This document shows positions 6,001 through 62,890 of a stretch of 64,000 nt of DNA, one piece after another; position 1 is the first letter of the stretch; every line of letters begins with the position of its first letter. The notes beneath the pieces are model-generated. The model was given only the letters and a program-made list of their open reading frames with translations. It made no database searches and was not told the origin of the DNA. A program made the translations under genes and the position numbers. The DNA lies in NCBI GenBank assembly GCA_963924565.1, contig OZ004609.1, forward strand, positions 28,830,001-28,894,000. The letters are read 5' to 3'. The DNA comes from Ascidiella aspersa (taxonomy: Eukaryota).

Positions 6001-9000
6001 TTTTAGCCAGTGACTTGGAGCCGCGATGCTTGATACTGATATTATGGAAGAATATCTCGCTGATAAACTCACCCTTGACAGATAATGTCCTAACATCCCC
6101 CTCGCAGCATTAACACGGTCGATAGTAATTATGCAATAAATTTAAATGATCAATAATGAGGTGTTTTGGAGGGGTCGTTCTATAGTGGAAGCAAAGCAAG
6201 ATAAAAACTCACAAGGAGACAGTTTGTTCTCCTGCTTACCACCGATTTTAATGATGTCGCCGGTTCAAAGACCAGCATCCTGTAACCGCAATCTACCCCT
6301 AAAATGTCTGTTCGCGCGTCTTATCTCTGTCCTCCCAACAGTGTTCGAATACACTTCAGCGGAGTAACCGAGATATCCCGGATCGCCAAACAGCTTTTAG
6401 TGCTCATAGATGATCGGAATTTATTCCCGACGGGCCTGAGCTTTCGACCCCTTTATCTCGTCTTGTCTGCTGACGATAAAGAAGTAATGGAAGAGCGAAG
6501 TTAAACTGTATATTGTCGCGACACCGGACGTTTTCGGCCATTTTACCGTGTAGACTTAATTTGGATGTCGCCAATGACCAGGTTACACCGATCAAGTCGC
6601 GACTGTGGACCATTGTAAACAGCGGTGAACTTTTATTTTAAGTCCATCTTCCAGATGCATCTTTGAGATGTCTCCTAGCCCATCCGGTGACAGCACACGC
6701 GATTGGTAAGTTCACAATTAACGCACAAGTCTCTGGCGCCGCGTCGAAATTGCCCTATCCGGTTTCCAACTTTCTCTCCCCGAAACATGCACTTTAAGGC
6801 GTTCTGCCGTTTCCGGTAACCCCAAGCCGGCGTTTTAGCTCGAAGCTGAAAGGGAGGTCGAGCGTTTGATGTGTTTCCCTTCATGCCGAATGCTGCTCCA
6901 ACGCCCACTTGACCCTGGATTGTGTTTATTTTACTGTTTTCCGGACCGCGCACACGCGCCCTTCTGTAGATTTTGCGACGCTCGCTCGCAGCTGAGACAT
7001 ACAGGCGCAAAAGGCCAGGCGATGGCCCGTACATTTGCTCTTTTTCATTGTCCCACTTATCCTACAAAATGATCTGGCCTCGTGTCAAACCTAACTTAAC
7101 GCAACTACGCCGTGAAGGAACTCTTGTACCAGACGTGTTTTGCCCGGGCGCAATGTTTGCAGGTTAACATGTTTAAATGCTCGAGTGGAAATAAGGGCGT
7201 CGTCCTTGTATTTTTCTTTGGCAAACACAGTCTTGCTTCGTCGGTTGGGCAGGCGCCAGGAAAAAACGCAAGAGTTGATTTTCGGCGTTCGGCCGCATTC
7301 GTCCAGGAAGCTAAGTACGCGGCATCGCTCAAAATGCAGGATACCATTAGCGGTTGATTTGCCCTATTGTTGCGGCTGTATTGCTATGATTCGACTGGCT
7401 ACGGCATTGACTGGCACGCCGGAGCCTACTTACAGCCACCGACAGCGCGGCAAATCGCGCGCCCGAAGGTGCCATTTGCGAGATTACATCTGCTCGCGCG
7501 CTGTTAGGGGGACGCGTTAGGGCGAAAATCAAAGATGACACCCTTTCATTTGCGCGGCCGCGGCGCTGATATCAGGCGCAACGAGACTGCAATTTGCGGC
7601 CGCCCTAATGCAGGCCTGGCCTTTCCGCCCGCCGCGGCATTCTTTCCATTCCTGGGCTTTCTACTCCAGCAAGTCTTGTTTCTGAGCCCCGGCGACTGGT
7701 TGCTGTATGTGGCGATCGTAAACGTCCCCTTAACCATCCAAGTAACCACGTTTCCGCCCGCGCCTGGAGACGCCCTGGGTGGCCGATGAAAGGGGGTATG
7801 GCAAGTTTGAAGAGGTAAATTTTGTTTGCGCACGCTGCTCGCCAGGGGATTATTTTTAATGTCCGCCCAATAACGCAGCGTCCCCCTCTTATCACCAGAT
7901 CTCGCGTTCCCTGCTGACCTGTGCGCCTTTGCCGCATGCTTATTAAGACGTATTAGGACAGGCCTGACCCACATCGCCTGTTTTTGGTGGCCGTCGGTTT
8001 AGCGCGAGGCATGTTATTTGTGCGCATTGTTGAACTAGCCTACTTGGCGTTTCGCTCACACGGGAATCGAGATAAATCCTTGTACAACAACGCGCTGCAA
8101 GATAGGCTACAACCGTCCCGCCATGTGGTCAGTTTTAGCCGAGTTTGCTGCCCTTCCATCAGCGAGAAAATTCCGAATTCCCGTGCCACAGATGCGTCTT
8201 CTCCAAAAAGCGGCTTTGTCGCATTCCAACCTTTTTTAACAGCGCGAACGGCCTGGGGAGGCGAAAGACAACGCAGTCAGTTTAGTTCTGACGAAAGCCA
8301 CTTGGCATTTGGCGGCGATAAGCCCGCGTCCGCGCGCCGGTTTCAATCTTATCGCTCACTCTGCTTGGCAATGAATCTGAAAGCCTTGACACACACCGGT
8401 GGCCTAAGTAGCGCTTGTTTAATTCCCGAACGGGAGTACGGCTCCTCGCCGTTTTATCAGGCGTCCTTCAAAACCGGTTGAACGCCCCAAAAAAGCGGCG
8501 CTCTGCTGTTTTTCCAAACCGCGATGTGTTTTTGGTCTTCCGCTGCTCGCAATACGCATTCAGGCGATCAAATTAAAATCTTGATTGGGCGCGTTCTGGG
8601 CAATGAAGGAAACGCACTTTAAATCCGGAGCACCGCAGATCGTCGTTCGGGGCCCAATTGGTTGCGCTTTTGGCAACCTGTCTTCTGCACTTGGGGAACC
8701 TAGCCAGGGTAAAATCAGTTAAAGCGACTTCAACCGACCACAAAAAGGCTTCGAGCAATTATGGGAGTTTGTCGCGTAGGTTCATAGCAATACTATTGGC
8801 GAACTTATGGACGATGCAGTTGGTGACAATGAACAGTGGGGACTTACAACCCTTGTAAAACCGAATTTAAAAATCATTACTTGTTGCCGCCCTATTTGCA
8901 TCTTGGTTGAACAGACGTCCTTCTTATAATGCATATGAGAATATAAGATTTTTGTTACGTGACTATTGAAGTGATCATTGATATTGAAAGTTGTGAAATA

Positions 9001-50930: not shown

Positions 50931-51983
50931 TTACAGCTTTACAATTTGTTTGCCAGTATTGCAGCCATTCATCATATCAATAAAAGCCTGACCACCATTC
51001 TCCAAGCCATGCACAAAATTTTCAGGAGAAACTATTTTCCCTGCTTCATAAATTTCCCTCAAGTATGTCAGTGTCTTTTCAAATTTATTGGGGTAGTTTA
51101 AAACTAGGAATCTGTCTCTAGATATTTTACGGCTTTCTATGATAGATTGGATTTCATTTTTTATAGGTGGTGGATATGGCACATCTTTGTTGTACACAGA
51201 TATTTGGCCGCACAGGATAACCTGAGAATTTGGGTTCATCTGCCTTATAACGGCATTGCTGATTTCTCCTCCAACATTGTCGAAGTATATATCAATACCT
51301 TGGGGACATTTTTCTTTGAGTTTCACTGCTACATCTTGGGTTTTGTAGCAGATGGCTGCATCAAACTGCAGCTTTTCACATAAAAATTCGCATTTCTTTT
51401 CTGACCCAGTAATACCAATCACTTTTTTGCAACCTTGCAGTTTAGCAAGCTGACCCGCTGTTGTGCCACATGCTCCAGCTGCTGCACTAATTACCATTAC
51501 TTGGTTGGCATCTGCAACTATGTTGCACATTTCTGAGATTCCTAAGGCAGCTGTTAGTCCAGTTACACCAAAAATTCCTAAAGCCAGGGAAGCATTTTCA
51601 GGCATGAGGCTATGCAATTTCTGCACACTTTTAGCATTAAGATTATTAAGAGTTTGCCAGGGCCACTCTAACCCAGCTGATGAAACTAAATCACCTTCAT
51701 TAATGCCGGCAGCACAGCTTTTAATCACTATACCAACCCCAGACCCAGAGATTGTGTCGCCAAGTTTCCACGCTGGAGCGTAATCAACACCACTGTCCTC
51801 ATTCATTCTGCATCGCATGTATGGGTCCACACTCAAATACAATGTTTCCAGTAAGACTTCACCTTGTCTTGGATTTGGAGGGGATGAAATGCTCTCACAA
51901 CAAAAGTTAGACACTGTTGGCTGCCCATTTACTCCAGGTCTTGAAGACAGATAAACTCGTTTGTTCATTTTTATATTTTGCAT
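50931..51983 (-). CDS. PTGR2: Prostaglandin reductase 2 (MDR-family NADP-dependent oxidoreductase), 350 aa, uninterrupted CDS
   Basis: TLYLSVDPYMRCRMNED, SAAAGACG, YFDNVGG, LCGQISVYNKDVPYPPP and RFLVLNY match PTGR2; ATG at 51983 just after a splice acceptor (the listed ORF start at 52073 is a TTG). Confidence 0.95.
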   Translation of the reverse strand: MQNIKMNKRVYLSSRPGVNGQPTVSNFCCESISSPPNPRQGEVLLETLYLSVDPYMRCRMNEDSGVDYAPAWKLGDTISGSGVGIVIKSCAAGINEGDLVSSAGLEWPWQTLNNLNAKSVQKLHSLMPENASLALGIFGVTGLTAALGISEMCNIVADANQVMVISAAAGACGTTAGQLAKLQGCKKVIGITGSEKKCEFLCEKLQFDAAICYKTQDVAVKLKEKCPQGIDIYFDNVGGEISNAVIRQMNPNSQVILCGQISVYNKDVPYPPPIKNEIQSIIESRKISRDRFLVLNYPNKFEKTLTYLREIYEAGKIVSPENFVHGLENGGQAFIDMMNGCNTGKQIVKL

Positions 51984-52002
51984 GGTTTTCAAGAGTTTCA
52001 AG

Positions 52003-52050
52003 CTAAAAAAAGGCAATACGAAGGGTAAAACAGAAAAAAACAAGGAACAA
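52003..52050 (-). promoter_or_regulatory. Strong 3' splice acceptor (cis or SL trans-splice) for PTGR2, lying in the FAM162-like 3' UTR
   Basis: Minus strand: ttgttccttgtttttttctgttttacccttcgtattgcctttttttag|cttgaaactcttgaaaaccATG. Confidence 0.7.
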
Positions 52051-52079
52051 TATAAATAATTATTATTACTCAAAAACGT

Positions 52080-52574
52080 TTATTCACTCGGTTTGGTTTC
52101 ATTTTTGCTTTGACGATAAACATAAATTACAATACCAACACCAGTTAAACAAAACAGAGTAAGCGCATAATCAGTGGTCATTGTCATCTTAAATCCTTTG
52201 TCCATGATTTCTGCCTTTACCGCATCTTTTTCTTTTTGACCTATTTGAACGGTTTTATACACAATTTCATTGGGCACGTCTTTAATGCTTTTATACTTGC
52301 CAAGCCTAACCAAAATCCATTTGTCAAACCAATGAAGTTTTCTGTGACGCACTTTGCCTTCTTTCTCCTCTTGCCGTTGTTTATTGATTATTTGACGGAC
52401 AGTTGATGTTGGCTTTGCCACTTTCTCCGTGACAACATGGGGGGTTGCATCACCCAGCGCTGGGCGAAATTTTTTTATTGTATCGGTGGTTACTTTGCCG
52501 CCTGATGCATATTGGCAAACACTGTAGTTTAAAGGTTTCTTCACCCTAATACTATAAAATATATTTTTTAACAT
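52080..52574 (-). CDS. FAM162: FAM162/DUF1075-like small mitochondrial membrane protein, 164 aa
   Basis: FDKWILVRLGKYKSIKDVPNEI resembles FAM162 WQKKILIWSGRFKKEDEIPETV; C-terminal TM YALTLFCLTGVGIVIYVY; basic presequence-like N-terminus. Confidence 0.65.
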   Translation of the reverse strand: MLKNIFYSIRVKKPLNYSVCQYASGGKVTTDTIKKFRPALGDATPHVVTEKVAKPTSTVRQIINKQRQEEKEGKVRHRKLHWFDKWILVRLGKYKSIKDVPNEIVYKTVQIGQKEKDAVKAEIMDKGFKMTMTTDYALTLFCLTGVGIVIYVYRQSKNETKPSE

Positions 52575-53554
52575 GGCTTATACACAGTTTCATCAATCCT
52601 AAAAAATACAGTTGTTTTAAATAATTTTTACGCGATGTTTATTTGTCCCAAAATATACACTTATTTTAGTGTTATAAAAAATATTAAAATCATACTCCAA
52701 TTGAAGATTGTAACTAATATACTCACACAATAATATTTCACTGTTTACCAAACAGAGCATTTACCATTGAGGTTACAAAGAATATAAAGAAAAACAGGCA
52801 GTAATCTTCTTTAACCTATATAGTTTAATAGTTATAGTACTCATTTGTTAATAGAAACAACGATGTTAAAAAATAATTTAAACAGTTTCCTCCAACCTAG
52901 CAGTACTTTGGGCGCTGGTCAAGAATGCCACAAGTTGTTTATAAGTACTGAAAGGTAATTCTATTTCACTAAGTTCATTCTTCTGATAGTGCTAGAATAA
53001 CCCTTGTTTCAAAATTGAAGCATGGGTTCAGCAGTATTTTGCCCATTGCGTCATATGACATGGTTCAAAATCAGGACATAATATTTCACCGTCATTCAAA
53101 GTTCGTGATGTGTCACAAAAAAATCTGTGTTGATTTATAATTAAATGTACATTTTGTTTCAATCATATGCATTTCATGTCATTGTCATTTCGCCGAAACA
53201 ATTGTTTTCTATGTTTTTAATAACTTTTAAATATCAACTGAGGGAAATTACCTGAAACCACTGGTTTAGGAAAATTGATATAATGTTTATATTGCGTTGT
53301 AGCTTTTTTATAAAATATTTTATTAGCTACAAAAACCCACCTGATTTTTAAAAAAGATTATCATTTGCAATTACGCTTACTCAGTAGCAGGCGATTAGTA
53401 ATTGAGTGAGTAAAACTGTAGCATTATTCGAAACAACAATACTAAACATTCATCAGCAGTCAACATCCGATTCTTAATTTGGTTTGTTGCATAGCTTAGT
53501 AGGATCTACTTTTTATAGTAACCAAACGACTTGTCAAAATTGAAATTGCAAAGG

Positions 53555-54005
53555 AGAAATAAATATATTAATAATACTTGATCCACCTGAACCTAAATCC
53601 AAATAGAGTTATCAATATTATAAAGCCCCAGACGGAAAAATATTTTATGCCCACCAGAGTTTTGCCATTTCCCCGTGTTCAAATATTTTAAATCACAATT
53701 TTTCGGTTAGGGTGCGGTTTAACGTTTGGATGTTAGTGTTATATTTATTCTACCAGATCTATAGGTTGCAATTTTAGATTTGAGTTGGTTTTCCAACAAC
53801 AATTAAAAAAGTGGTATAGGATTCTAGACCTGTTGATGTTCAGGGATTTAAATAACTAATACCGTTTGGGTTAGTGTTTAAGTTTGGGCTTGGGTGGGTC
53901 AAGTATTATTATTTATTCTCCCATATTTATTTCTTCCTTGCAATTTCAATTGTAACAACTCGCTTAGTTACTGTCAAAAATTGTACGATTCTAGACCAGC
54001 CAGTC
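53555..54005. repeat. Degenerate fragments of the same palindromic MITE family as 63564-63762
   Basis: Shared motifs ggttagggtgcgg, ggtgggtcaagtatta, taataatacttgatccacc (inverted copy), ggattctagacc; a TIR-like ggcgctggtcaagaat also at 52911. Confidence 0.65.
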
Positions 54006-54583
54006 TGGAAATTTTGGCAGATCTCGACGAGATCTCGCAGTTGCACGACTGGAAAAATCCGGTAAAAAAGGTGAAAAGGGTGTACTTTATGATTTTCCTA
54101 TGCACTCGGTATGGCATCCATTGCACTGTAAATGTATGCCGCACAAGCGTTTTACATATTTGGGGTGTAGCTCAATTTTTTTTCGGGTGCACTTTAAAAC
54201 TCTTGGGTGCATTTGCCATATTTCCACAGTGTTAGACATCACCCAATACTTTACTGTTTGATAAATGGATAAAAAGTATATGACTTGCATTTTAGGGAAT
54301 GGTCCAATCGGTTTTGGTAGATTAACTGATTTTAAGATAATAACTGTGGAAGTTAGTATATTCAACCTCAAACTACTTTAGTATTATAGGAAGTTGTTTG
54401 ACTAACTTTCAGAATTTATGTGGAATTAAAAGCTCCTAAATTGCTTTATCAAAAATGGAGCACTCTAAAGACCCCTAACCTCATTTGTTGTCACTGTAAA
54501 TAGCCTCTTTCAATTATTTTTAATCTCGTAAATAACTTGTTCTTTATTAGCAGGTTAAACAGAAATATTTTTTGTGGTATAAG

Positions 54584-57500
54584 ATGAAACACAGCATTTC
54601 CAATGTAGATGCCCTTCGCTATCTTGCCTTGAAGCGTTGTTGTGGAAAATTAGGACGGTGCTCTGCCAATGAGAAAAATGTTGCTTACATCTGTGAACAG
54701 TACAGACAATCTGCTCGTTTTCGAGCGATGGTAGATAAAACTTTGCAAGAAGAACACAAGTGCAAAAAACAAACTTTGCCTGACAGTACGACAGACAGTA
54801 CAGCAGACAGGAAAAATTCAACAGAACAAGCAAGTAGAAACCATTTTGACAATTTAAAATCAGTAAATCAAGCTAATAACTCTTCACACAGTTCAAAGGG
54901 CAATGAATGTGTTTATTCACCAAACCCTACACTTTCACCAAAGAAACACAAAAGACATTATATTTCTGCTTCAGATATTGCCCGCTATTTAAAACTTGCA
55001 AATAAACCCGTTTCAAAAAGAAAAGGTTATGAGATGGTCAGATTTAAATACTCCTATTATGCTGAGTATAGAGCTTTGGTGGATGCCACCCTCTTAGCAG
55101 ACAAGGAAAAATCTACAAAACAATTAGTTGAGAATGATGTTCCTAAGAGCCCTGTCATTCCTCCTTTTACTAACAGCAACAATCAAGTTTCAAACCAAGA
55201 GAATACATGTTTAAACTCTTTGACAGTCAATGAGGAAATTCGAAACCATTTAAATAATTGTACTACCACAACCAACCCAAAACAATCTGAAAATTTTGAA
55301 GACCTTTCCCCTTCCTCACTTTCAAATAACAGCAAACAAATATCAAAAACAACTACAAAGCCATATATATCAGCATTTGACATTTACCGCTTTACAAGAT
55401 TAAAAATGAAATCATACTCCAAGCACAAGGGCTATACGAAAGTAAGATATAAATACTTGAATGATGCCCTATATCGGGAATTGGTGGATGCCACTTTAGC
55501 AGAATTGGATAAAAACAAAGAGGTAGAACACAAGGAGATGTCTGCAAATCAAGCCAGAAACACACTCCCTGAAGACCCTGTTGCTTCCTCGTTTACATAC
55601 AACAATCAAGAAGAGAACCAAGTTAATGCAACAAATGAAGAAAGCTTAATACCATCATCTAGTTTTGCTATTCAACAAACCCTTTTACAATCACAAGCTT
55701 TTGTAGACCTTAACCATTCTTCACTTTCTAATCCGAAAAAGCAGCGGTCAACAAAGACTAGAAAACATTTTATTTCCAGACCTGACGTTTTTCGGTATTT
55801 AAAACTAAAAAACATTCGTCGTTCAAAGGAAAAAAGTTATTTTAAGATTAGAGACAAATACAATAAGGATGCTGAATTTCGAGCTTCAGTTGATTCTATT
55901 CTCTTTGCAGACAGGGAGAAATCAGCAAAGCAAGTCAGTCAAACATGCCCTGAAGACTCTGTTACTTGCCCTATTTCAAATAACAATGAAGTAGAGAATC
56001 CGGTTAATAATTTGCAGTCTTGTGCAACAGATGAAGAAAGCTTAATACCATCATCTAGTTTTGCTGTTCAACAAACCCTTTTACAATCACAAGCTTTTGT
56101 AGACCTTAACCATTCTTTAATTTCTAATCCAAACAAGCAGCGGTCAACCAAGACTAGAAAACACTTTATTTCCAGACCTGACGTTTTTCGGTATTTAAAA
56201 CTAAAAAACATTCGTCGTTCAAAGGAAAAAAGTTATTTTAAGATCAGAGACAAATATAATAAAGATGCTGAGTTTCGAGCTTCAGTTGATTCTACTCTCT
56301 TTGCAGACAGGGAAAAATCAGCAAAGCAAGCCAGTCAAACAGGCCCTGAAGATTCTGTTACTTGCCGTATTTCCAGTAACAATAAAGTAGAGAATCCTGT
56401 TAACAACTTACAGTGTTTTGCAACAAATGAAGAAAGCTTAATATCATCCCCTAGTTGTGCAGCTCAACCTACCCATGCGCTATCAGACCTTGACCATTCT
56501 TTAATTTCAAATACCAGCGATCAAAGGTCTAGAATTACGAGAAAACACTTTATTTCGAAATCTGACGTTGCTCGGTATTTAAAACTGAGAAATATTAGTT
56601 GTTCAATTAAAAAGGGTTACCAAAAGATCACAGACAAATACAATAAGGATGCTGAGTTTCGGGCTTTAGTTGACGTCACTCTCTTAAAAGGCAATGATAA
56701 AGCATCAAAACAATCCAACATTAGATTCAGTTCATTGAATAAAAATAAAAAAATAATGGAACAAGGAAACGAACATAACTGTGATGTTTACCAGCTTCGC
56801 AACCGTGCTGCACCTAAAACAATTCAACCCATAACGAAAAACTTTTCAAACTTGGAAATTTCTCTTTTTGATATTTGTCAATACCTCATGTTAAAAAGGG
56901 GACCTACTTTCAAAGTTACTATTAGGCACATTGAGGACACCTTAAAGCGTTGCACAGAAGATAGAAATTTATGTGCTTTCGTTTCAAAAACAGTGCAAGA
57001 AAAAAAGTACCAAGCAAGTGATGATCCTTCAGAAAATAATTTTTTAACCAACAATCCAGTTCAAGCAAGCTTGGAGGATCCATCCTTGTTACACCCAGTC
57101 CCACCTGTTTCTGAAACTATTTCAGAAGATGAAACAATACATAAGTTTCGTAGAATCTCCCGTGCTAATGCTCGTCTTTATATTATGTTAAAATGTGGAA
57201 CAGCGGACAGAATATCTAGACAAAACATTGAACGGGTTCGGGCAAAATACCAGTCAGATGAAACGTATCGTAATGCTGTTTTGCATATGTTTCAGGATGT
57301 TGACGGCCAGGGAACAAATTGCTTCAATAGACTTTTGCAAGATGTGTCATTTCATTTGTTAGGTAAAGGCAAAGCCAACTCTGCAGCAAATTTGCAAGAA
57401 GTTGGACAAACTTTTCCTCTTAATGCGACAGTAAGTCCAATCTCAAAACAGCCAGACATTGAACAGCACCAAGTTGCAGCCCAGAGCAATGCTTCATCTT

Positions 57501-59368
57501 TTGCAGAACCAACATACAGTCCACCAAAGAAGAGGAGGAAAATTGTTCTTGAAATATCCAAGCACAACTCACCAACAAAGTTACAACAATCTAGTTTTAC
57601 TGGGACCCCTCAAACCATGGATATACTAAGTCAAGCAGTTGAAGTTTTAAACGTACCCGAGGCTAGCAGTTTTATGACTCTGCAGCCACATGGACAATTA
57701 CAACAACAAATAGAAGACGTTGAAGATTTAAGGCTTCCTGTCATTGATGATGGTCTGTCCAACGAAACCCCAGAGGTATCTGATGGTGAAGTTAGCCTTA
57801 CCCCAGAGGTATCTGATGGTGAAGTTACCCCTTACTATAGCCCCTCCAAAGAAAGCAGTCCTCAAATTGTGGAGATTGGTTTCAATGAAGTAGATGAACA
57901 AGCAAATCTAAACGACCTTGTCGATATGGATGCAAGTTACGCTCTGAACTCCACAAGTGAGTCAGCTGTAAACGAGTTGGATGACTGTCAAGTTAAGAAG
58001 AAAGTCGAAATTGACTATTTGGATGACAGACCAAAAGTATCATTGCTGGATTCTAGAATTAAGCATTGTGGCCTTAATGCAATGCGCAAAGTGCGTCGAA
58101 AAAGGACAATTCAAGGCGACGATAACGACTGCGAAGCGGTAACGCTGGATTGCCCTGCAGGCGGCACTTTTCAATTCCCCAGGGATGTCTGGGAGACGTG
58201 CAAGCGCTCCAGAGTCAGAAGGCAGTTCAAAGACGGCTCCTGGAGATCAGTCATTTTGAAGAACATAAAGTCCTTCAACCCAGTGTGTGCATTCATCTTC
58301 AACCGACACTATGTGTGCGATGCGAGAACGTACCGCAAGAATCGCCTCTCCCCTATGTTTTACTGCATGGGCTACTGCAATTTTTCTGTGTGCAGCAACG
58401 AGTTCCAGGTGAAGCTGAACGCGGACCTGACGGCACACGTGCAGTTTGTGGGCACTGTGCGGCACAAACCGCACGAGGACGTGGCGAACCGCCTCACTAC
58501 ACAGGAAAGAAGAGAGCTTAAGGAGATATTAAAAACGACAAGCGTCGAGGAGTACGAGAAATTCCGCATGGCCTCTCTTACGCCCGAGGAGATCGCGGTC
58601 GGAAACCGGAACGGCTGTCCAAGTCGAGACCTGCTAAATATGATCAGGAACCAGTCTTTGCGCGAGGTGCTGAAAGAAGCGAACAGACAACTGGTGGCCA
58701 CTATGGAAAGCGAAGGCCACGACTGGCCGGCTTTAGAGGGCAAAAAAGAACACCAACGCAAAAAATTTTTCCACAAACCGGATGAGAGCGAAGAAAGCGA
58801 CGACTCGGAACAAAACGAATCGTTTTTCAGGCACCCGACGCCCACCCAGGGGCGCTTCACCTTTTCCCGAGAGGTTTGGGAGCGTTGCAGAAGAACCAAA
58901 GACAAGCGGCGCTTAGTGACCAACGAGTGGGCGGTCGAGGTGCGGTCCAAGTTAAAGGAATTGAACAACATGTGCTCCTTCTGCTTCACCTGTCACTTCG
59001 TTCGAAGAGAAGACAGCCAGCGACCGGCACAGGCACCACTGCTTACCTGCACCGGCTACTGTCGCTTCCCAACCTGCTCGGTGCGCTTCCACGTCGCGGT
59101 CGATCACCAGCTGGAAGCCTTCGTCAGGTTTAAAGGCCGACTCAAGCACCGGAGGAACGAAACGTATATGCACTGCATCCGGGGTGTGGAGAGGGATCGG
59201 CTCCGTCAGATCCTAATGACCACCAGCGTCACCGACTACTACAACGAGCAGCTGAAAAAGCTGACGCAGAAGGAGATCGACAGTGGCTGCCGCGATCGCT
59301 GTCCTTCCAAGGTTGTTTTAAAGCAAATCAGAGCCGAGTCGATTCGATTGATGAAAGAACAGCGGTGA
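54584..59368 (+). CDS. Uncharacterised 1594-aa probable nuclear DNA-binding protein: 8 novel ~50-aa repeats, NLS, 2 transposase-derived Cys/His domains
   Basis: 4.8-kb uninterrupted ORF preceded by acceptor tctttattagcag (54553); first ATG 54584; PPKKRRKIV at 57521-57547; AATAAA about 50 nt after the stop. Confidence 0.85.
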   Translation: MKHSISNVDALRYLALKRCCGKLGRCSANEKNVAYICEQYRQSARFRAMVDKTLQEEHKCKKQTLPDSTTDSTADRKNSTEQASRNHFDNLKSVNQANNSSHSSKGNECVYSPNPTLSPKKHKRHYISASDIARYLKLANKPVSKRKGYEMVRFKYSYYAEYRALVDATLLADKEKSTKQLVENDVPKSPVIPPFTNSNNQVSNQENTCLNSLTVNEEIRNHLNNCTTTTNPKQSENFEDLSPSSLSNNSKQISKTTTKPYISAFDIYRFTRLKMKSYSKHKGYTKVRYKYLNDALYRELVDATLAELDKNKEVEHKEMSANQARNTLPEDPVASSFTYNNQEENQVNATNEESLIPSSSFAIQQTLLQSQAFVDLNHSSLSNPKKQRSTKTRKHFISRPDVFRYLKLKNIRRSKEKSYFKIRDKYNKDAEFRASVDSILFADREKSAKQVSQTCPEDSVTCPISNNNEVENPVNNLQSCATDEESLIPSSSFAVQQTLLQSQAFVDLNHSLISNPNKQRSTKTRKHFISRPDVFRYLKLKNIRRSKEKSYFKIRDKYNKDAEFRASVDSTLFADREKSAKQASQTGPEDSVTCRISSNNKVENPVNNLQCFATNEESLISSPSCAAQPTHALSDLDHSLISNTSDQRSRITRKHFISKSDVARYLKLRNISCSIKKGYQKITDKYNKDAEFRALVDVTLLKGNDKASKQSNIRFSSLNKNKKIMEQGNEHNCDVYQLRNRAAPKTIQPITKNFSNLEISLFDICQYLMLKRGPTFKVTIRHIEDTLKRCTEDRNLCAFVSKTVQEKKYQASDDPSENNFLTNNPVQASLEDPSLLHPVPPVSETISEDETIHKFRRISRANARLYIMLKCGTADRISRQNIERVRAKYQSDETYRNAVLHMFQDVDGQGTNCFNRLLQDVSFHLLGKGKANSAANLQEVGQTFPLNATVSPISKQPDIEQHQVAAQSNASSFAEPTYSPPKKRRKIVLEISKHNSPTKLQQSSFTGTPQTMDILSQAVEVLNVPEASSFMTLQPHGQLQQQIEDVEDLRLPVIDDGLSNETPEVSDGEVSLTPEVSDGEVTPYYSPSKESSPQIVEIGFNEVDEQANLNDLVDMDASYALNSTSESAVNELDDCQVKKKVEIDYLDDRPKVSLLDSRIKHCGLNAMRKVRRKRTIQGDDNDCEAVTLDCPAGGTFQFPRDVWETCKRSRVRRQFKDGSWRSVILKNIKSFNPVCAFIFNRHYVCDARTYRKNRLSPMFYCMGYCNFSVCSNEFQVKLNADLTAHVQFVGTVRHKPHEDVANRLTTQERRELKEILKTTSVEEYEKFRMASLTPEEIAVGNRNGCPSRDLLNMIRNQSLREVLKEANRQLVATMESEGHDWPALEGKKEHQRKKFFHKPDESEESDDSEQNESFFRHPTPTQGRFTFSREVWERCRRTKDKRRLVTNEWAVEVRSKLKELNNMCSFCFTCHFVRREDSQRPAQAPLLTCTGYCRFPTCSVRFHVAVDHQLEAFVRFKGRLKHRRNETYMHCIRGVERDRLRQILMTTSVTDYYNEQLKKLTQKEIDSGCRDRCPSKVVLKQIRAESIRLMKEQR
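55627..56690 (+). repeat. In-frame 396-bp (132-aa) tandem repeat, ~2.7 copies, inside the large ORF
   Basis: tgcaaca(a/g)atgaagaaagcttaata at 55627, 56023 and 56419; copies 1 and 2 nearly identical. Confidence 0.92.
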
Positions 59369-60050
59369 CATTGGGATGTGTACGGCGGCCCGTTTGCCCG
59401 TTTGTTTCTATTACTTTAATAAAACGCACCAATTGTCGCATTGCTTGATATAAGGCTGTCGAAAACAAGACTCCGTTTGTACATCGTGTGTTTCGCACAG
59501 TATTGTGTGAACTGTTTACGTTTTCATTAGTAGTCACGCTATTTCCTTAACCGTACTCCACATCTTGCGCTACCTTATGTGTGAAGTACAGTAATCGTGT
59601 TGCCGTGTCATGTTTTTTTGCCGTGCGATTTTACGTATTAAAAATACGATGTGAAATTGTGTAAGTTTTAGACTGGGTTGCCGAGAGCAGCGTCGGGTCA
59701 AGAGGCTAAGATCTTTATAGGCAAACAACAAAACAGCTCTAAAGTTGAAAATTGGCCATGTTCATAACTCTGCGAGAAACTGCATAGAAGTCACAATTTT
59801 TCAATTTGCCCATATCACGTATGTTCAGCCAACTTGCGGAAGTATGAGATATTGTGTTTATTTCTGTTTCATGGTCTATGACTTTTTGTGAGAAGGCATA
59901 TGTGTATAAATTTTGCTTCACTAAATATAGCCCAATCCTCGAAAAATGATAGGATCATACAATTCATCTAAAATTTGAATAAATCAGACAAAAAACGAGA
60001 CAATCCCTTTAAGTACATCACCCATCAACCAAAAACGACTCGCCTAAAGG

Positions 60051-60272
60051 CAGAGGCGTAGCAAGGGTATTTTGCACCCGGTGGCAAACTATAAAATTTT
60101 CGCCCCCTCCTCCACGTTTAATTACATTTTCCATTAGCCTACATTAACATAACCTTCCTTTATACGATAAAACAATTAACATTTTAATAGAACGTTGATT
60201 TAAAGAAGTAGCAGCCTCTTTTGGCATTTGAAAGCCTCATTTTGGCGCCCCTGTACCCTTGGCGCCCGGGGA
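60051..60272. mobile_element. Truncated hAT-like MITE fragment
   Basis: Starts CAGAGGCGTAGC with gcacccgg, cgcccc and ggcgccc subterminal motifs; no right TIR found. Confidence 0.4.
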
Positions 60273-60573
60273 CATACGAGGTGCGAAAAACTAGATAAGC
60301 ACGCGATAACTGGACAATGCGAAAAAACGAGGCTACAATTTTCTAAAGCCCTTTTTTAGTCGCGGATCAAAAACAAACGCAGAAAGCTGTTAGCGGGCCT
60401 TTTAATTTTAATTGACAATTATGTGTAGTTTTCAGCATTATATTACGAAACAACTTAATTTACCGACTGTTAAACACGGCCGATCTGGGAATTGTTTGCA
60501 TTAAAAAGGGGTCTAACCATACATTTAAGAAAAGGGCAGTATAAAGAGTCCGCGAAATAATTAGCCTCTACAG

Positions 60574-60713
60574 CAGTGTTTCTTAACCTTTTTTAGTTGG
60601 GGGCGCACCTAGAGACGTATGCAAAACGTGGCGGCGCACCTTACGAGTGAAGCGAGCGCAAAATTTGAGGTGTACCGATATTTCTCTTAAATTGCCTGCA
60701 TTTTTTATTACAT
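60574..60713. mobile_element. Left end of a Charlie-type hAT MITE, interrupted
   Basis: ctctacag|CAGTGTTTCTTAACCTTTTT...ggcgcacc motifs; right end not seen. Confidence 0.5.
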
Positions 60714-62890
60714 CCCAGCTAACACACAACGTTTTTTCGACGTTCGGATCTTTTTTTTAAACTAAGTAAACGTTGTGGGAATGTGTCCAAACGAACGTTA
60801 AGAAAATACGTCGAGGCCGTATTATCAAAACGTAATGTAAAACGTTGCACTAACGTCAAAATTAACGTTAAGAAAAACCGCAATGCGACCAAATTTCAAC
60901 GTCATTTGTAACGTATAAACAACGTTGATTACAGACGTCGATCTTAACATGTTTTACATCATTTTGGACGTCACTTCGAACGTTTGTTGAACGTTATTTT
61001 TTAACGTTGCGACGAACCACAATGAAACAAATTTACAACGTCATAGGTGACATGCAAATAACGTTTATTACTGACGTAAAATCTAACATTTTTAGACCGG
61101 TTTAGACGTCTTTTACACGTTTAATTAACGCTGTATATTTAACGTTCCGTAAAACTATAACGAAACAACTTAGAACGTCATACGTGACGTAGAATTCACG
61201 TTCATTTCTGACGTCACAATTAACTTGTTATAGACAAATTTTAACGTAACTTCAAACGTTTGATTAACGTTCTTTCGTAACGTTGAAACAAACCAAATAC
61301 AACTTATTTTAAAACGTCATAAATCACGTACTAAAACGTTGTTTACTGACGTCAAAACTAACGTCTTTTTTTTTTTTTCAATTCAATGGTATTCTTTAAA
61401 AATATTGTGGCGCACCACAATGTAACCTGATTATAACGTCAAAGGTGACGTACGAACAAGGTTAATTACTTACTTCGAGGCTAATAACTTGTTTTAGGCT
61501 ATTTTGTACGTCAGAGCGAACATTTTGCTAACATTATTTTTAAACTTTGTGACCACCATTGATGTAACTAATTTACAACGTGATACGTGACGTACAAACA
61601 ACATTAAATTCTGACATCAAAGCTAATTTCTTGGAGACCAGGACGCCATTTTAAGCGTTATAATAACGTCATTTTACCGTTTTGACTAACTACAATGTTA
61701 TATAATTAAAACGTAAAACGTGACGTAACAACAACGTTACCTTTTGTAACAAGGATAATTTTTTTATGACTATTTTATACATCATTTCTAACGTTTTAAT
61801 AACGTCATTTCTCAACCTTATTGCAAACCTTAATGTAACCAATTTAGAACGTCATAGGTGACGTACATGCAACGTTAATTACTCACGTCAAAGTAAACTT
61901 GATTTCATTTCATACGTTGTCGTGAGAAACCACAATGGACCCAATTTATTAAATCCTACGTGACGTACAATCAACGGTGATTTCTGACGTCAAAGCTAAC
62001 TTATTTAAGACCGTTTTGGATGTAATTTTAAACGTTTTAATAACGTTATTTCTTGACGTTGCGACAAACTAAGATCCAACTAACTGACAACGTCACGCGT
62101 GACGTATAAATGACGTTGAATTCCAAGGTCAAAGCTAACTTCTTTGACAGCATTTTGGACGTGATTTTAAGCGTTTTAACAACGTTATTTTTTGGTTTGT
62201 AACTAACAACAATGCAATCTAATTAGAACTTCACGTGACGTAAAAACTACGGTAAATACTGACATCGAAGCTTACTTGTGTTTAGAATTAGACTATTTTA
62301 TACGTCATTTTTAACGTTAATATGACGTTATTTTTCAACGTTATTACAATCTTCAATATAACCAATTCAAAACATCCTACGTGGCCTATATGCAAAAAGC
62401 AATGATAACTGTCGCTGAAGATAACTTATTTGAAACCATTTTAAATGCTATTTTCAAAAGTTCCAATAACTTTATTTCTTGACATTACGAAAAACTAAAA
62501 CGCGACCAAATTTGCAACATCTTGAATGATCGTAGTCATTTCGAAGGTTACGGCAAACCACAATGCAACCGGATTAAAACGTTAAACGTGACCTATACAA
62601 CAAGGTATATACCTGACATCGAGGTCAACTTGTTTTAGACTATTTTATACATAAATTAAAACATTTCATTAATATTGTTTAGCGTTTTTACAAACGTCAA
62701 AGGAACCCTATTAAAACGTTAAACGTGAGGTAGAAACAACATCAATTAGCCTACTTACGTTGAAGGTAACTGATTTTAGACGAATTTCCGTGTCATACAC
62801 AGTTTTTTCGACTGAGCTGAAGTACAATCGAATCAAAATGTCATACGTGTCGTATAAAAAACGTTGTTTACCGACGTCAAAACTAACTTT
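60714..62890. repeat. ACGT-rich tandem array, ~138-bp unit, ~16 diverged copies, starting with a CCCAGCTAAC terminus (CMC/EnSpm-like subterminal array)
   Basis: Anchor aacgtcat.cgtgacgta near 60901, 61040, 61177, 61316, 61438, 61580, 61713, 61851, ~61953, 62092, ~62230, ~62374, 62581, 62718, 62840. Confidence 0.85.

What the first reader, a model, noticed from the sequence alone, without database searches (positions are those of the whole stretch)
58151..59368. Tandem pair of transposase-type Cys/His DNA-binding domains without a catalytic core: candidate domesticated transposon gene
Seen: two ~170-aa homologous domains (from 58151 and 58835) sharing G.F.F.R.VWE.C.R...W....N..C.F.F..H.V......P...C.GYC.F..C...F.V.......V.F.G...H......ER..L..IL.TTSV..Y......LT..EI..G.R..CPS...L..IR..S. 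The ORF stops right after the second copy, with no DDE domain and no bracketing TIR/TSD. Known (from memory): this pattern resembles the N-terminal region of NOF-FB/Rehavkus-like Mutator-superfamily transposases, whose C-x4-C...H modules belong to the WRKY/GCM1-like zinc-binding group that has repeatedly given rise to host transcription factors. Inference: with the PKKRRKI NLS and the 8 N-terminal repeats, this is a lineage-specific, multivalent DNA-binding protein, possibly a regulator of related non-autonomous elements.
Basis: partly seen in the sequence, partly recalled or inferred. Interest (0 to 1): 0.85.

Follow-up and report, generated by a model that had tools for sequence, protein, structure and literature searches.

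The report
Transposase DNA-binding domain pair turned gene
A single-copy, transcribed 1,594-codon gene ends in two diverged copies of the zinc-binding DNA-recognition domain that foldback-type Mutator-like transposons in this genome carry in front of their cutting enzyme, but it has lost that enzyme, so it is a good though unproven candidate for a transposon part recruited as a host DNA-binding protein.

Summary
One open frame (ATG 54584, stop 59368, + strand) ends in two ~177-aa domains (58151-58681 and 58835-59365) that are 36% identical (E 1e-38).

- **Transposon origin.** The domain has no Pfam model. It recurs about 28 times in this 308-Mb genome, always just upstream of a transposase core. 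The carrier elements have 830-bp perfect inverted ends built of tandem units, a 9-bp target duplication, and Ulp1-protease and PHD tails. This is the foldback/Rehavkus/NOF type.
- **Fold.** An AlphaFold model (pLDDT 94) best matches WRKY and Aft2 DNA-binding domains (Z 6.2-6.8).
- **No enzyme, no ends.** No transposase core lies within the window plus 10 kb on each side. No bracketing inverted repeats were found from 20 kb upstream to 14.6 kb downstream.
- **Copy number and expression.** The gene is single-copy. It is transcribed on the sense strand without splicing.
- **Domain history.** The two domains are sister copies (support 99/87). Both keep all 11 family-conserved residues. Their nearest kin are foreign transposases, not the resident elements.
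- **Not shown.** No orthologue, no clear purifying selection (pN/pS about 0.5) and no DNA target.
- **Oddity.** Third-position GC jumps from about 0.3 to about 0.72 exactly where the domain block begins.
- **Earlier notes.** The scan had already noted the resident foldback element elsewhere in this genome.

Verdict: a new member of a known kind.

The parts
54584..59368 (+). Whole coding sequence, first ATG to stop (1594 codons; the open frame itself starts at 54551, right after a TAG). A single exon.
   Evidence: ORF; sequence at the start; stranded RNA reads of run X4 lie only in the orientation expected for a + strand RNA, from the 54600 bin to the 59400-59599 bin, with no joints. Contigs of run X3 span 54422-59584.
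54596..57319 (+). Eight copies of a ~45-50-aa basic three-helix module (IS..D..RYL.LK...KY...FR..VD.TL), starting at residues 9, 131, 266, 401, 533, 661, 763 and 862. Low-complexity linkers separate them. Copies 4 and 5 are 97% identical.
   Evidence: 396-bp tandem period. AlphaFold pLDDT 83.5, three helices; found nowhere else in the genome; no Pfam or PDB match.
57524..57544 (+). PKKRRKI, a classical basic nuclear-localisation-type motif (residues 985-991).
   Evidence: position. The function is inferred from the motif type only.
58151..58681 (+). Domain copy D1 (residues 1194-1370). Domain residues 1-110 form a WRKY-GCM1-like beta-sheet part. Domain residues ~115-177 form a four-helix part.
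   Evidence: pLDDT 94.3. WRKY18 Z 6.8, Aft2 Z 6.2-6.3; family-conserved W14, W31, C46, F50, H53, C76, C81, G101, H105, R120 and G151 are all present.
58682..58834 (+). Acidic/basic linker of 51 residues between the two domains.
58835..59365 (+). Domain copy D2 (residues 1422-1598), followed at once by the stop codon. It keeps the same 11 family-conserved residues.
   Evidence: sister of D1 (ultrafast bootstrap 99, SH-aLRT 87).
59369..59584 (+). 3' untranslated region, with AATAAA at 59418-59423. An 8-base length polymorphism lies at 59388.
   Evidence: sequence. RNA depth fades after the 59400-59599 bin, the X3 contig ends at 59584, and the indel table lists 59388.
58100..59368 (+). Compositional block. 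Third-position GC is 0.65-0.80 and CpG observed/expected about 1.0, against 0.25-0.42 and 0.5-0.6 in the first ~1170 codons of the same frame.
   Evidence: Neighbouring genes have GC3 0.34-0.40. Resident transposon ORFs have GC3 0.37-0.40.

Best explanation
This is a single-exon, single-copy, transcribed gene for a large nuclear protein. Its C-terminal 405 residues are two sister copies of the DNA-recognition module of foldback/Rehavkus/NOF-type Mutator-like transposases. That module is a WRKY-GCM1-like zinc-binding beta-sheet followed by a small helical bundle.

Shown:
- homology to the transposase N-terminal domain;
- a predicted WRKY-like fold;
- loss of the catalytic core and of the terminal repeats;
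- an intragenic origin of the duplication;
- retention of every family-conserved residue in both copies;
- sense-strand transcription.

Inferred:
- Each copy binds a specific DNA site, as WRKY, Aft2 and transposase N-terminal domains do.
- The pair reads two adjacent or repeated sites.
- The eight basic helical repeats and the PKKRRKI motif add nuclear targeting and further nucleic-acid or protein contacts.

The protein would therefore act as a sequence-specific chromatin or DNA binder without any cutting activity. It would be either a lineage-specific transcription factor or a repressor that occupies transposase-binding repeats of related elements.
For: - **Repeat is real.** E 1e-38.
- **Domain family.** An exhaustive profile search found 309 proteins at E<=1e-3. 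Of the 41 fetched relatives of 600 aa or more, 37 show core similarity, almost always starting within about 30 residues after the domain. None has two copies of the domain.
- **Resident carriers are young transposons.** Copies on different chromosomes are 99.1-99.8% identical. One has 830-nt, 100% complementary inverted ends and a 150-bp minisatellite. Its 9-bp target duplication is AATAAAGAC. The encoded proteins carry Ulp1 and PHD domains.
- **Fold.** Model pLDDT 94.3. WRKY18 gives Foldseek probability 0.99 and VIA Z 6.8 with 77 of 80 residues aligned. WRKY1 gives Z 6.3, Aft2 Z 6.2-6.3. WRKY proteins are the only PDB sequences hit by the family profile, at a non-significant E of 0.25.
- **Single copy.** The next best genomic match is 31% identical. 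DNA contig depth equals that of the unique flanks.
- **No core, no terminal repeats.**
- **Expression.** Stranded RNA reads cover the frame with no splice joints.
- **Frame integrity.** A second haplotype carries about 30 substitutions but no indel inside the frame, while 8-bp and 4-bp indels lie just outside it.
- **Polymorphism.** Listed variants are 24 nonsynonymous to 13 synonymous, against 3.7:1 sites.
- **Duplication inside the gene.** D1 and D2 are sisters (99/87). They sit in a 99/91 clade with a foreign transposase group, apart from the resident elements (100/99).
- **Precedent.** Stand-alone WRKY-GCM1 proteins derived from MULE transposases are documented, including Aft2/Rcs1 and solo forms in Caenorhabditis (PMC1702500).
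Against: - No orthologue was found: none with two domains in 1.84 billion representatives, and none by word-index search. Long-term retention is therefore not shown.
- pN/pS of about 0.5 comes from an incomplete list of 37 variants and is only weakly below neutrality. D1 alone shows 6 nonsynonymous to 2 synonymous variants.
- The sharp GC3 jump at the start of the domain block suggests the block joined the AT-rich N-terminal part recently. The conservation of both copies could then have been earned elsewhere.
- Structural Z scores of 6-7 are middling. No Pfam WRKY, FAR1, FLYWCH or GCM model matches.
- The fourth zinc ligand is not identified.
- RNA depth is low (0-10 reads per bin from about 6% of one run), with empty bins at 58400-58799.
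- DNA binding and any target are untested.
Confidence: 0.6

Rival explanations
1. A young chimeric gene still evolving near-neutrally. A fragment holding an already duplicated DNA-binding module was recently joined to a fast-evolving AT-rich repeat region. It is transcribed but has no established host function yet.
For: - GC3 switches from about 0.3 to about 0.72 within about 60 nt at the domain block. This is unlike the neighbouring genes (0.34-0.40) and unlike any transposon copy examined (0.37-0.48).
- N-terminal repeats 4 and 5 are 97% identical, so the array is still expanding.
- No orthologue was found.
- D1 has 6 nonsynonymous to 2 synonymous variants.
- RNA level is low.
Against: - A 1594-codon frame in 36% GC DNA stays open, and a second haplotype has no indels in it.
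- All 11 family-conserved residues survive in both copies at 64% divergence.
- No tandem-domain donor exists in this genome or among the 183 related protein sequences retrieved and examined.
- D2 carries at most one variant in the second haplotype.
Confidence: 0.27
2. The coding part of a defective, non-autonomous ('hyper-parasitic') transposon that carries only DNA-binding repeats and depends on transposase supplied in trans. This would resemble the Mutyl versions in Yarrowia that have 3-4 WRKY-GCM1 repeats and no transposase.
For: Such elements are described (PMC1702500). Active relatives with the same domain are present in this genome. A MITE-like inverted repeat of very high read depth lies about 600 bp upstream, at 53510-53979.
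Against: - The gene is single-copy by protein search and by read depth.
- No bracketing inverted repeats or foldback arrays lie from 20 kb upstream to 14.6 kb downstream.
- The domains are only 24-31% identical to those of resident elements and fall outside their clade. Resident transposases would be unlikely to recognise any ends it had.
Confidence: 0.06
3. The domain pair no longer binds DNA and serves as a protein-interaction or structural module, or the frame is a transcribed pseudogene-like relic.
For: Fold matches are only middling (Z 6-7). No direct evidence for DNA binding exists. The helical half has only weak matches to HTH/Myb-like domains (Z 4.3-4.9).
Against: The Cys/His set conserved across the whole family, including active transposases, is intact in both copies. 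The top structural matches are all DNA-binding WRKY-GCM1 domains and cover almost their full length. The protein also carries a nuclear-localisation-type motif and basic repeats.
Confidence: 0.07

Closest known systems
N-terminal DNA-binding region of foldback/Rehavkus/NOF-type Mutator-like transposases (Repbase Rehavkus group; Drosophila FB-NOF 120.7 kDa protein type)
   Same: Significant homology to the domain that sits directly before the transposase core in these elements. The resident carriers show the group's hallmarks: a 9-bp target duplication, long composite inverted ends, a minisatellite and a PHD finger (PMC6446971).
   Different: The window gene has no core, no Ulp1/UCH/PHD tail and no terminal repeats. 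It has two domains in tandem, which none of the 183 related sequences retrieved shows. It adds eight unrelated helical repeats. It is only 24-37% identical to any transposon copy. I could not compare it with the Drosophila NOF sequence itself, so that link rests on an atlas cluster name with score 0.77.
Stand-alone WRKY-GCM1 transcription factors derived from MULE transposases (yeast Aft2/Rcs1, Candida Rbf1, solo forms in Caenorhabditis; Babu et al. 2006, PMC1702500)
   Same: The same evolutionary route: a transposase DNA-binding domain kept and the catalytic domain lost, in a single-copy gene with no transposase nearby. Aft2 is among the best structural matches (Z 6.2-6.3).
   Different: Those factors come from the insert-containing MULE family with Pfam-recognisable relatives, and each carries one domain. 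This one comes from the Rehavkus/foldback branch, is duplicated in tandem, and has an extra helical subdomain in each copy. Its conservation across species is not shown.
Multi-domain WRKY-GCM1 proteins (plant group I WRKY factors with two WRKY domains; FLYWCH proteins with up to five repeats; Mutyl elements with 3-4 repeats)
   Same: Tandem repetition of a WRKY-GCM1-type domain within one polypeptide (PMC1702500).
   Different: There is no sequence-level relationship to WRKY or FLYWCH. The unit here is 177 aa rather than about 60 aa.
FAR1/FHY3 and MUSTANG (plant MULE-derived genes)
   Same: Host genes derived from Mutator-like transposases that use the N-terminal WRKY-GCM1-type domain to bind DNA (abstracts of PMC6000157 and PMC11216215, listed).
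   Different: FAR1/FHY3 keep the whole transposase body (core plus SWIM). This gene keeps only the DNA-binding module.

Membership tests
WRKY-GCM1 zinc-finger superfamily | Four-stranded antiparallel beta-sheet core superimposable on WRKY, GCM or Aft2 DNA-binding domains | tested here: met
   AlphaFold model pLDDT 94.3, with strands at 48-55, 70-76, 84-89 and 94-100 plus 4-8. Foldseek top hits are WRKY18 (probability 0.99, E 0.012) and Aft2. VIA gives WRKY18 Z 6.8 (77/80 aligned, rmsd 3.0), WRKY1 Z 6.3, Aft2 Z 6.2-6.3 and RRS1-WRKY Z 5.9. The Z values are middling, so the match is moderate rather than compelling.
WRKY-GCM1 zinc-finger superfamily | Zinc ligand set: two Cys at the strand hairpin and two His (or His/Cys) after the last strand | tested here: inconclusive
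   C76-x4-C81-x23-H105 is present in both copies and is 98-100% conserved across 73 family members. C46 (100%) and H53 (91%) are also conserved.
WRKY-GCM1 zinc-finger superfamily | Sequence-profile match to a curated family of the superfamily (WRKY, FAR1, DBD_Tnp_Mut, FLYWCH, GCM) | tested here: not met
   No such Pfam hit at E<=1 for either copy or for 32 family members. The family profile against PDB sequences hits only WRKY18 and WRKY1, at a non-significant E of 0.25-0.83. Atlas feature hits to GCM, FAR1, ZSWIM3_N and ALS2CR8 clusters are leads only.
Foldback/Rehavkus/NOF-type MULE transposase, N-terminal domain | Homology to the domain directly preceding the catalytic core of transposon-encoded proteins | tested here: met
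   tblastn and blastp E 1e-11 to 1e-17 against five resident full-length proteins, at their residues ~310-580. HMM hits to 309 proteins. Core similarity follows the domain in 37 of 41 long members and in the nearest metagenomic relatives.
Foldback/Rehavkus/NOF-type MULE transposase, N-terminal domain | Carrier elements have a 9-bp target duplication, long inverted ends with internal tandem repeats, a minisatellite and a PHD finger (Rehavkus definition, PMC6446971) | tested here: met
   L013 element: arms 1901-2730 and 7642-8471, 830 nt, 100% complementary, containing 345-bp tandem units. It has a 150-bp x 5.2 minisatellite and the target duplication AATAAAGAC. PHD and Peptidase_C48 are in the ORF. 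A second copy on another chromosome is 99.1% identical.
Foldback/Rehavkus/NOF-type MULE transposase, N-terminal domain | Catalytic core recognisable as MULE (Pfam PF10551 or PF00872) | tested here: not met
   No MULE hit even at E<=10 for three cores, nor at E<=0.01 for ten long relatives. The core alignment has invariant D (DATGS), a near-invariant second D, C..H and an invariant E, compatible with a DDE plus CxxH enzyme but not specific to MULE. Atlas hits to MULE and NOF-FB clusters score below 0.8. Superfamily placement therefore rests on the 9-bp duplication, end structure, PHD finger and these leads.
Domesticated (host-recruited) transposase-derived gene | Single copy, immobile: no terminal repeats, no target duplication, no catalytic domain | tested here: met
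   Read depth equals that of the unique flanks.
Domesticated (host-recruited) transposase-derived gene | Intact frame that is transcribed | tested here: met
   sense-strand stranded reads across the frame, no joints, and no indels in the frame in other haplotypes.
Domesticated (host-recruited) transposase-derived gene | Syntenic orthologues in other species under purifying selection | not testable with these tools
   No eukaryotic genome collection was searchable. The within-species pN/pS of about 0.5 from 37 listed variants is only suggestive.

The most novel reading that the evidence does not exclude
The domain block is a recent arrival from a compositionally foreign source, either a GC-rich locus or another genome carried in by a horizontally moving foldback-type element. 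It was fused in frame to a home-grown, still-expanding array of helical repeats. The result would be a brand-new multivalent protein that sits on the tandem subterminal repeats of foldback elements and blocks their transposase. That would be a host- or element-encoded repressor built from two transposase DNA-binding domains.
Probability: 0.12. Interest if true: 0.7.

Novelty: new member of a known kind. Interest (0 to 1): 0.45.

Why it matters
Recruitment of Mutator-like transposase DNA-binding domains as regulators is well documented in fungi and plants (Aft2/Rcs1, FAR1/FHY3). It is much thinner for animals, and I found no record of it for the foldback/Rehavkus/NOF branch.

This locus gives a clean, testable case. 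The donor domain family is alive in the same genome as young elements with defined repeat arrays. The derived gene has lost the enzyme, doubled the reader domain and is expressed. One can therefore ask directly whether such a protein binds, and silences or exploits, transposon ends.

The work also defines a ~175-aa domain family of 309 or more members that Pfam does not cover. A confident structural model (pLDDT 94) links it to the WRKY-GCM1 fold.

The abrupt codon-composition break inside a single frame is an unusual marker. It could date how the gene was assembled.

Tried and rejected
- **Pfam.** Scans of the whole protein, each domain, 32 family members, the N-terminal repeats and the transposon cores gave nothing relevant.
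- **Word-index search.** The homologue search with the domain block found nothing among proteins of 880-2800 aa. The exhaustive profile search found 309 relatives.
- **Resident elements as donors.** Rejected: the resident copies form a separate clade (100/99), and the window domains group with a foreign multi-copy transposase set (99/91). The first quick tree, which included two long-branch rows (OWN_L016 and P0101), left this unresolved. Those two rows were left out of the careful tree.
- **Spliced downstream DDE exon.** Rejected: there are no RNA joints and no core-like coding sequence in the window or its flanks.
- **Enclosing foldback element.** Rejected for the span from 20 kb upstream to 14.6 kb downstream.
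- **N-terminal repeat fold.** A three-helix model with no meaningful PDB match (best E 6.4). Left unresolved.
- **Core profile against PDB sequences.** It matched only the USP-type tail carried by some members, so the superfamily could not be confirmed this way.
- **The look-up of encoding contigs.** Closed. The context of the nearest relatives was obtained through the search for related loci instead.
- **Other.** Complex prediction was not used, because no binding claim between proteins is made.
Full report
**The observation.** The window holds one very long open frame on the + strand, 54572-59368 (1598 aa; first ATG at 54584). A TAG lies immediately upstream of the frame, at 54548-54550. The last 405 residues consist of two stretches, 58151-58681 and 58835-59365. 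They align over 175 residues with 36% identity and E 1e-38. The stop codon follows the second copy directly.

**What the domain is.**
- Pfam recognises nothing in the protein or in either copy, nor in 32 relatives.
- A six-frame search of the window's own 308-Mb genome finds the query once at 100% identity. It also finds 28 other places at 23-32% identity, most inside open frames of several hundred to about 2900 codons.
- Five of these frames were cut out. [quoted passage not shown] The fifth is a frame of more than 2600 aa with PHD fingers and a ubiquitin hydrolase.
- In each, the homologous domain lies in the N-terminal part: residues ~310-580, or ~1430-1600 in the giant frame. It is followed by about 500 conserved residues.

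**The carriers are young transposons.**
- Copies on different chromosomes are 99.1-99.8% identical over 4.4-5.0 kb. They are flanked on both sides by arrays of 322-345-bp units in inverted orientation.
- The element in L013 has arms of 830 nt that are 100% complementary, and a 150-bp minisatellite of 5.2 units.
- Its target duplication is a perfect 9 bp, AATAAAGAC. The element is 6571 bp long.
- These features match the Rehavkus group as tabulated by Dupeyron et al.: 9-bp duplication, inverted ends of 26-400 bp, a PHD finger and a minisatellite (PMC6446971). The composite inverted ends and 9-bp duplications also match foldback elements (PMC3169594).
- The atlas leads for the core are MULE clusters and a cluster named '120.7 kDa protein in NOF-FB transposable element', whose members carry Peptidase_C48 and PHD. 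Scores were 0.77-0.79, so these are leads only.
- Pfam's MULE models do not match the core, even at E 10.
- The core alignment has an invariant Asp in DATGS, a near-invariant second Asp, a C..H motif and an invariant Glu. This suits a DDE enzyme but is not diagnostic of a superfamily.
- I therefore treat 'Mutator-like, Rehavkus/foldback type' as well supported by element anatomy. It is not proven at the level of the catalytic domain.

**The wider family.**
- An exhaustive profile search with the two copies found 309 proteins at E<=1e-3 and 93 at E<=1e-10.
- Named members are uncharacterised animal proteins from medaka, a sea cucumber and Styela clava.
- Of the 41 fetched relatives of 600 aa or more, 37 show similarity to the transposase core, which almost always begins within about 30 residues after the domain.
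- The best-scoring relatives, the P0001/P0002 group, come from metagenomes. There they occur as many diverged copies, and their frames also run on into the core.
- None of the 183 related sequences retrieved has two copies of the domain.
- Across 73 full-length domains the conserved positions are W14, W31, C46, F50, H53, C76, C81, G101, H105, R120 and G151. All eleven are present in both window copies.

**Fold.**
- With a 32-sequence alignment, AlphaFold gives a confident model: mean pLDDT 94.3 and pTM 0.82. It has a beta-sheet part with inserted helices (residues 1-110) and a four-helix part (about 115-177).
- Foldseek's best PDB matches are the WRKY18 DNA-binding domain (probability 0.99, E 0.012) and yeast Aft2 bound to DNA.
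- The independent all-against-all aligner puts Aft2 first (Z 6.2), with WRKY33 and WRKY1 at Z 5.1.
- The second look gives WRKY18 Z 6.8 with 77 of 80 residues aligned, WRKY1 Z 6.3, Aft2 Z 6.3 and RRS1-WRKY Z 5.9.
- The family's sequence profile hits only WRKY18 and WRKY1 among PDB sequences, though at a non-significant E of 0.25.
- These Z values are in the range where a common arrangement can mislead. However, every top hit belongs to one superfamily, and that superfamily was already linked to MULE transposases by Babu et al. (PMC1702500). The C-x4-C-x23-H spacing also fits.
- The helical half has only weak matches to HTH/Myb-like DNA-binding modules (Z 4.3-4.9).

**Is the window gene a transposon?**
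- The resident full-length proteins match the 64-kb window only at the two domains. They match nothing in the 10 kb beyond each end.
- There are no bracketing inverted repeats within 52500-62500.
- From 20 kb upstream to 14.6 kb downstream the only matches are a 69% dispersed repeat and fragments of an upstream MITE-like repeat.
- The gene is single-copy by protein search. Its assembled-read depth matches that of the unique flanks.
- The neighbours are ordinary genes: an intronless RGS7-type frame (48297-49733), a PTGR2-type frame (50931-52073) and a FAM162/DUF1075-type frame (52080-52574).

**Expression and integrity.**
- In a stranded RNA-seq run of the same species (X4, about 6% of reads sampled), every read over the frame has its first mate on the - strand. 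This is the orientation expected for a + strand RNA.
- Coverage runs from the 54600 bin to the 59400-59599 bin. None falls at 54200-54599, and there are no splice joints.
- Depth is low, with empty bins at 55600-55799, 58400-58799 and 59200-59399.
- Contigs of run X3 cover only 54422-59584, which looks like the transcript's extent.
- A second haplotype (X2) differs by about 30 substitutions over 56215-59548. It has no indel within the frame, although 8-bp and 4-bp indels lie just downstream.
- The 37 listed in-frame variants are 24 nonsynonymous and 13 synonymous, against a site ratio of 3.7. That gives pN/pS of about 0.5.
- This is weak evidence, because the list is truncated and mutation bias was ignored.
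- D1 holds 8 variants and D2 at most one.

**History of the two copies.**
- A careful maximum-likelihood tree of 82 domains was built with two long-branch rows left out. It places D1 and D2 as sisters (ultrafast bootstrap 99, SH-aLRT 87).
- They sit inside a 14-row clade (99/91) that consists otherwise almost entirely of the metagenomic P0001/P0002 transposases.
- The resident elements form a separate clade (100/99).
- So the duplication happened within the lineage leading to this gene. The donor was not one of the foldback families now active in the genome.

**An unexplained feature.**
- The frame is a compositional chimera. GC3 is 0.25-0.42 over the first ~1170 codons. It rises to 0.65-0.80 from about nt 58110 to the stop.
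- CpG observed/expected goes from about 0.5-0.6 to about 1.0.
- Neighbouring genes have GC3 0.34-0.40. Resident transposon frames have 0.37-0.40, and the nearest foreign relatives 0.37-0.48.
- The CpG change continues into the downstream intergenic DNA and may mark a methylation boundary. The GC3 excess, however, is confined to the domain block.
- This argues that the block has not shared the mutational history of the rest of the frame. It is the main reason I keep a substantial probability on a recently assembled gene.

**The N-terminal part.**
- Eight copies of a ~45-50-aa basic module start at residues 9, 131, 266, 401, 533, 661, 763 and 862.
- The module is predicted as three helices (pLDDT 83.5).
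- It occurs nowhere else in the genome and has no Pfam or PDB match.
- Copies 4 and 5 are 97% identical, so the array has grown recently.
- PKKRRKI lies at residue 985.

**Mechanism proposed.**
- Shown: a transposase-derived, WRKY-like, Cys/His-conserving module, doubled, without enzyme or ends, in a transcribed single-copy frame.
- Inferred: each module binds a DNA site. The pair, joined by a 51-residue linker, reads two sites. The protein is nuclear. It acts either as a lineage-specific transcription factor or as a competitor for transposase-binding repeats.
- Babu et al. describe both outcomes for MULE-derived domains. They also describe defective Mutyl elements carrying only 3-4 WRKY-GCM1 repeats. 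That precedent lowers the novelty and defines the transposon-relic rival.

**Verdict.** The finding is a new member of a known kind: a transposase DNA-binding domain recruited without its enzyme, from a branch and in an architecture not seen among the relatives retrieved here. Domestication in the strict sense is not yet shown.

**Earlier notes of this scan.**
- Note s1-790954 had already flagged the young foldback-type element with a transposase-Ulp1-PHD fusion on another piece of this genome. Its length of 6571 letters equals that of the L013 element I delimited independently.
- Note s1-790931 had flagged the eight N-terminal repeats.

Noticed in passing
L013:1901-8471 (G000:C7:21312900-21319470); second copy in L018 (G000:C8): A very young foldback/Rehavkus-type element, 6571 bp long. 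It has 830-nt inverted ends that are 100% complementary and contain 345-bp tandem units, a 150-bp x 5.2 minisatellite, and the 9-bp target duplication AATAAAGAC. Its intact 1227-aa frame carries Ulp1-protease and PHD domains. The copy on another chromosome is 99.1% identical, so the element looks recently or currently mobile.
   Followed up: yes
L016:2186-10000 (G000:C6, about 922185-930000) and other places listed (C8:2493794, C9:19554421, C4:11073854): Giant open frames of 1600-2900 codons that combine the same DNA-binding domain and transposase-like core with PHD fingers and a USP/UCH-type ubiquitin hydrolase instead of Ulp1. Database relatives P0053, P0062 and P0079 show the same core-plus-UCH layout. 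This transposase-deubiquitinase fusion was not examined further.
   Followed up: partly
window 58100-59368 versus 54572-58080: A sharp codon-composition break inside one open frame. GC3 goes from about 0.3 to about 0.72, and CpG observed/expected from about 0.55 to about 1.0. The CpG change continues downstream past 61400, while the GC3 excess is limited to the domain block.
   Followed up: partly
window 48297-49733 (+), 50931-52073 (-), 52080-52574 (-): Uninterrupted frames for a complete RGS7-type protein (DEP, DHEX, GGL and RGS domains, 478 aa), a PTGR2-type oxidoreductase (about 380 aa) and a DUF1075/FAM162-type protein. In most animals these genes have many introns. Here each is one open frame.
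   Followed up: partly
window 53510-53979: A MITE-like inverted repeat (arms of 57 and 29 nt, 83-84% complementary) about 600 bp upstream of the start codon. Summed contig depth there is 20-70 times that of the flanks, and many reads run off into other sequence. It is a high-copy dispersed repeat.
   Followed up: no
window 60862-61284: A 139-bp tandem repeat (3.1 copies, 71% matches) rich in ACGT/CpG (CpG observed/expected about 3), 1.5 kb downstream of the gene. No matching inverted array lies upstream.
   Followed up: no
window 54596-57319: The eight-fold basic three-helix repeat has no detectable relative anywhere else in the genome and no Pfam or PDB match. Two units are 97% identical, so the array is still expanding.
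   Followed up: partly
window 43236-44018 (+): A 260-aa open frame with GC3 0.75 and CpG observed/expected 1.0 and no Pfam match. It is another GC-rich island in an otherwise AT-rich stretch.
   Followed up: no
L023-L050 (metagenome contigs Ga0210059_*, JGI24021J15306_*, JGI24158J21664_*, JGI24159J19872_*): The closest relatives of the window's domains occur as at least 28 loci, 48-94% identical to one another, in four related metagenome samples. Their frames continue into the transposase core. This is evidently a multi-copy element of an unidentified eukaryote in those samples.
   Followed up: partly
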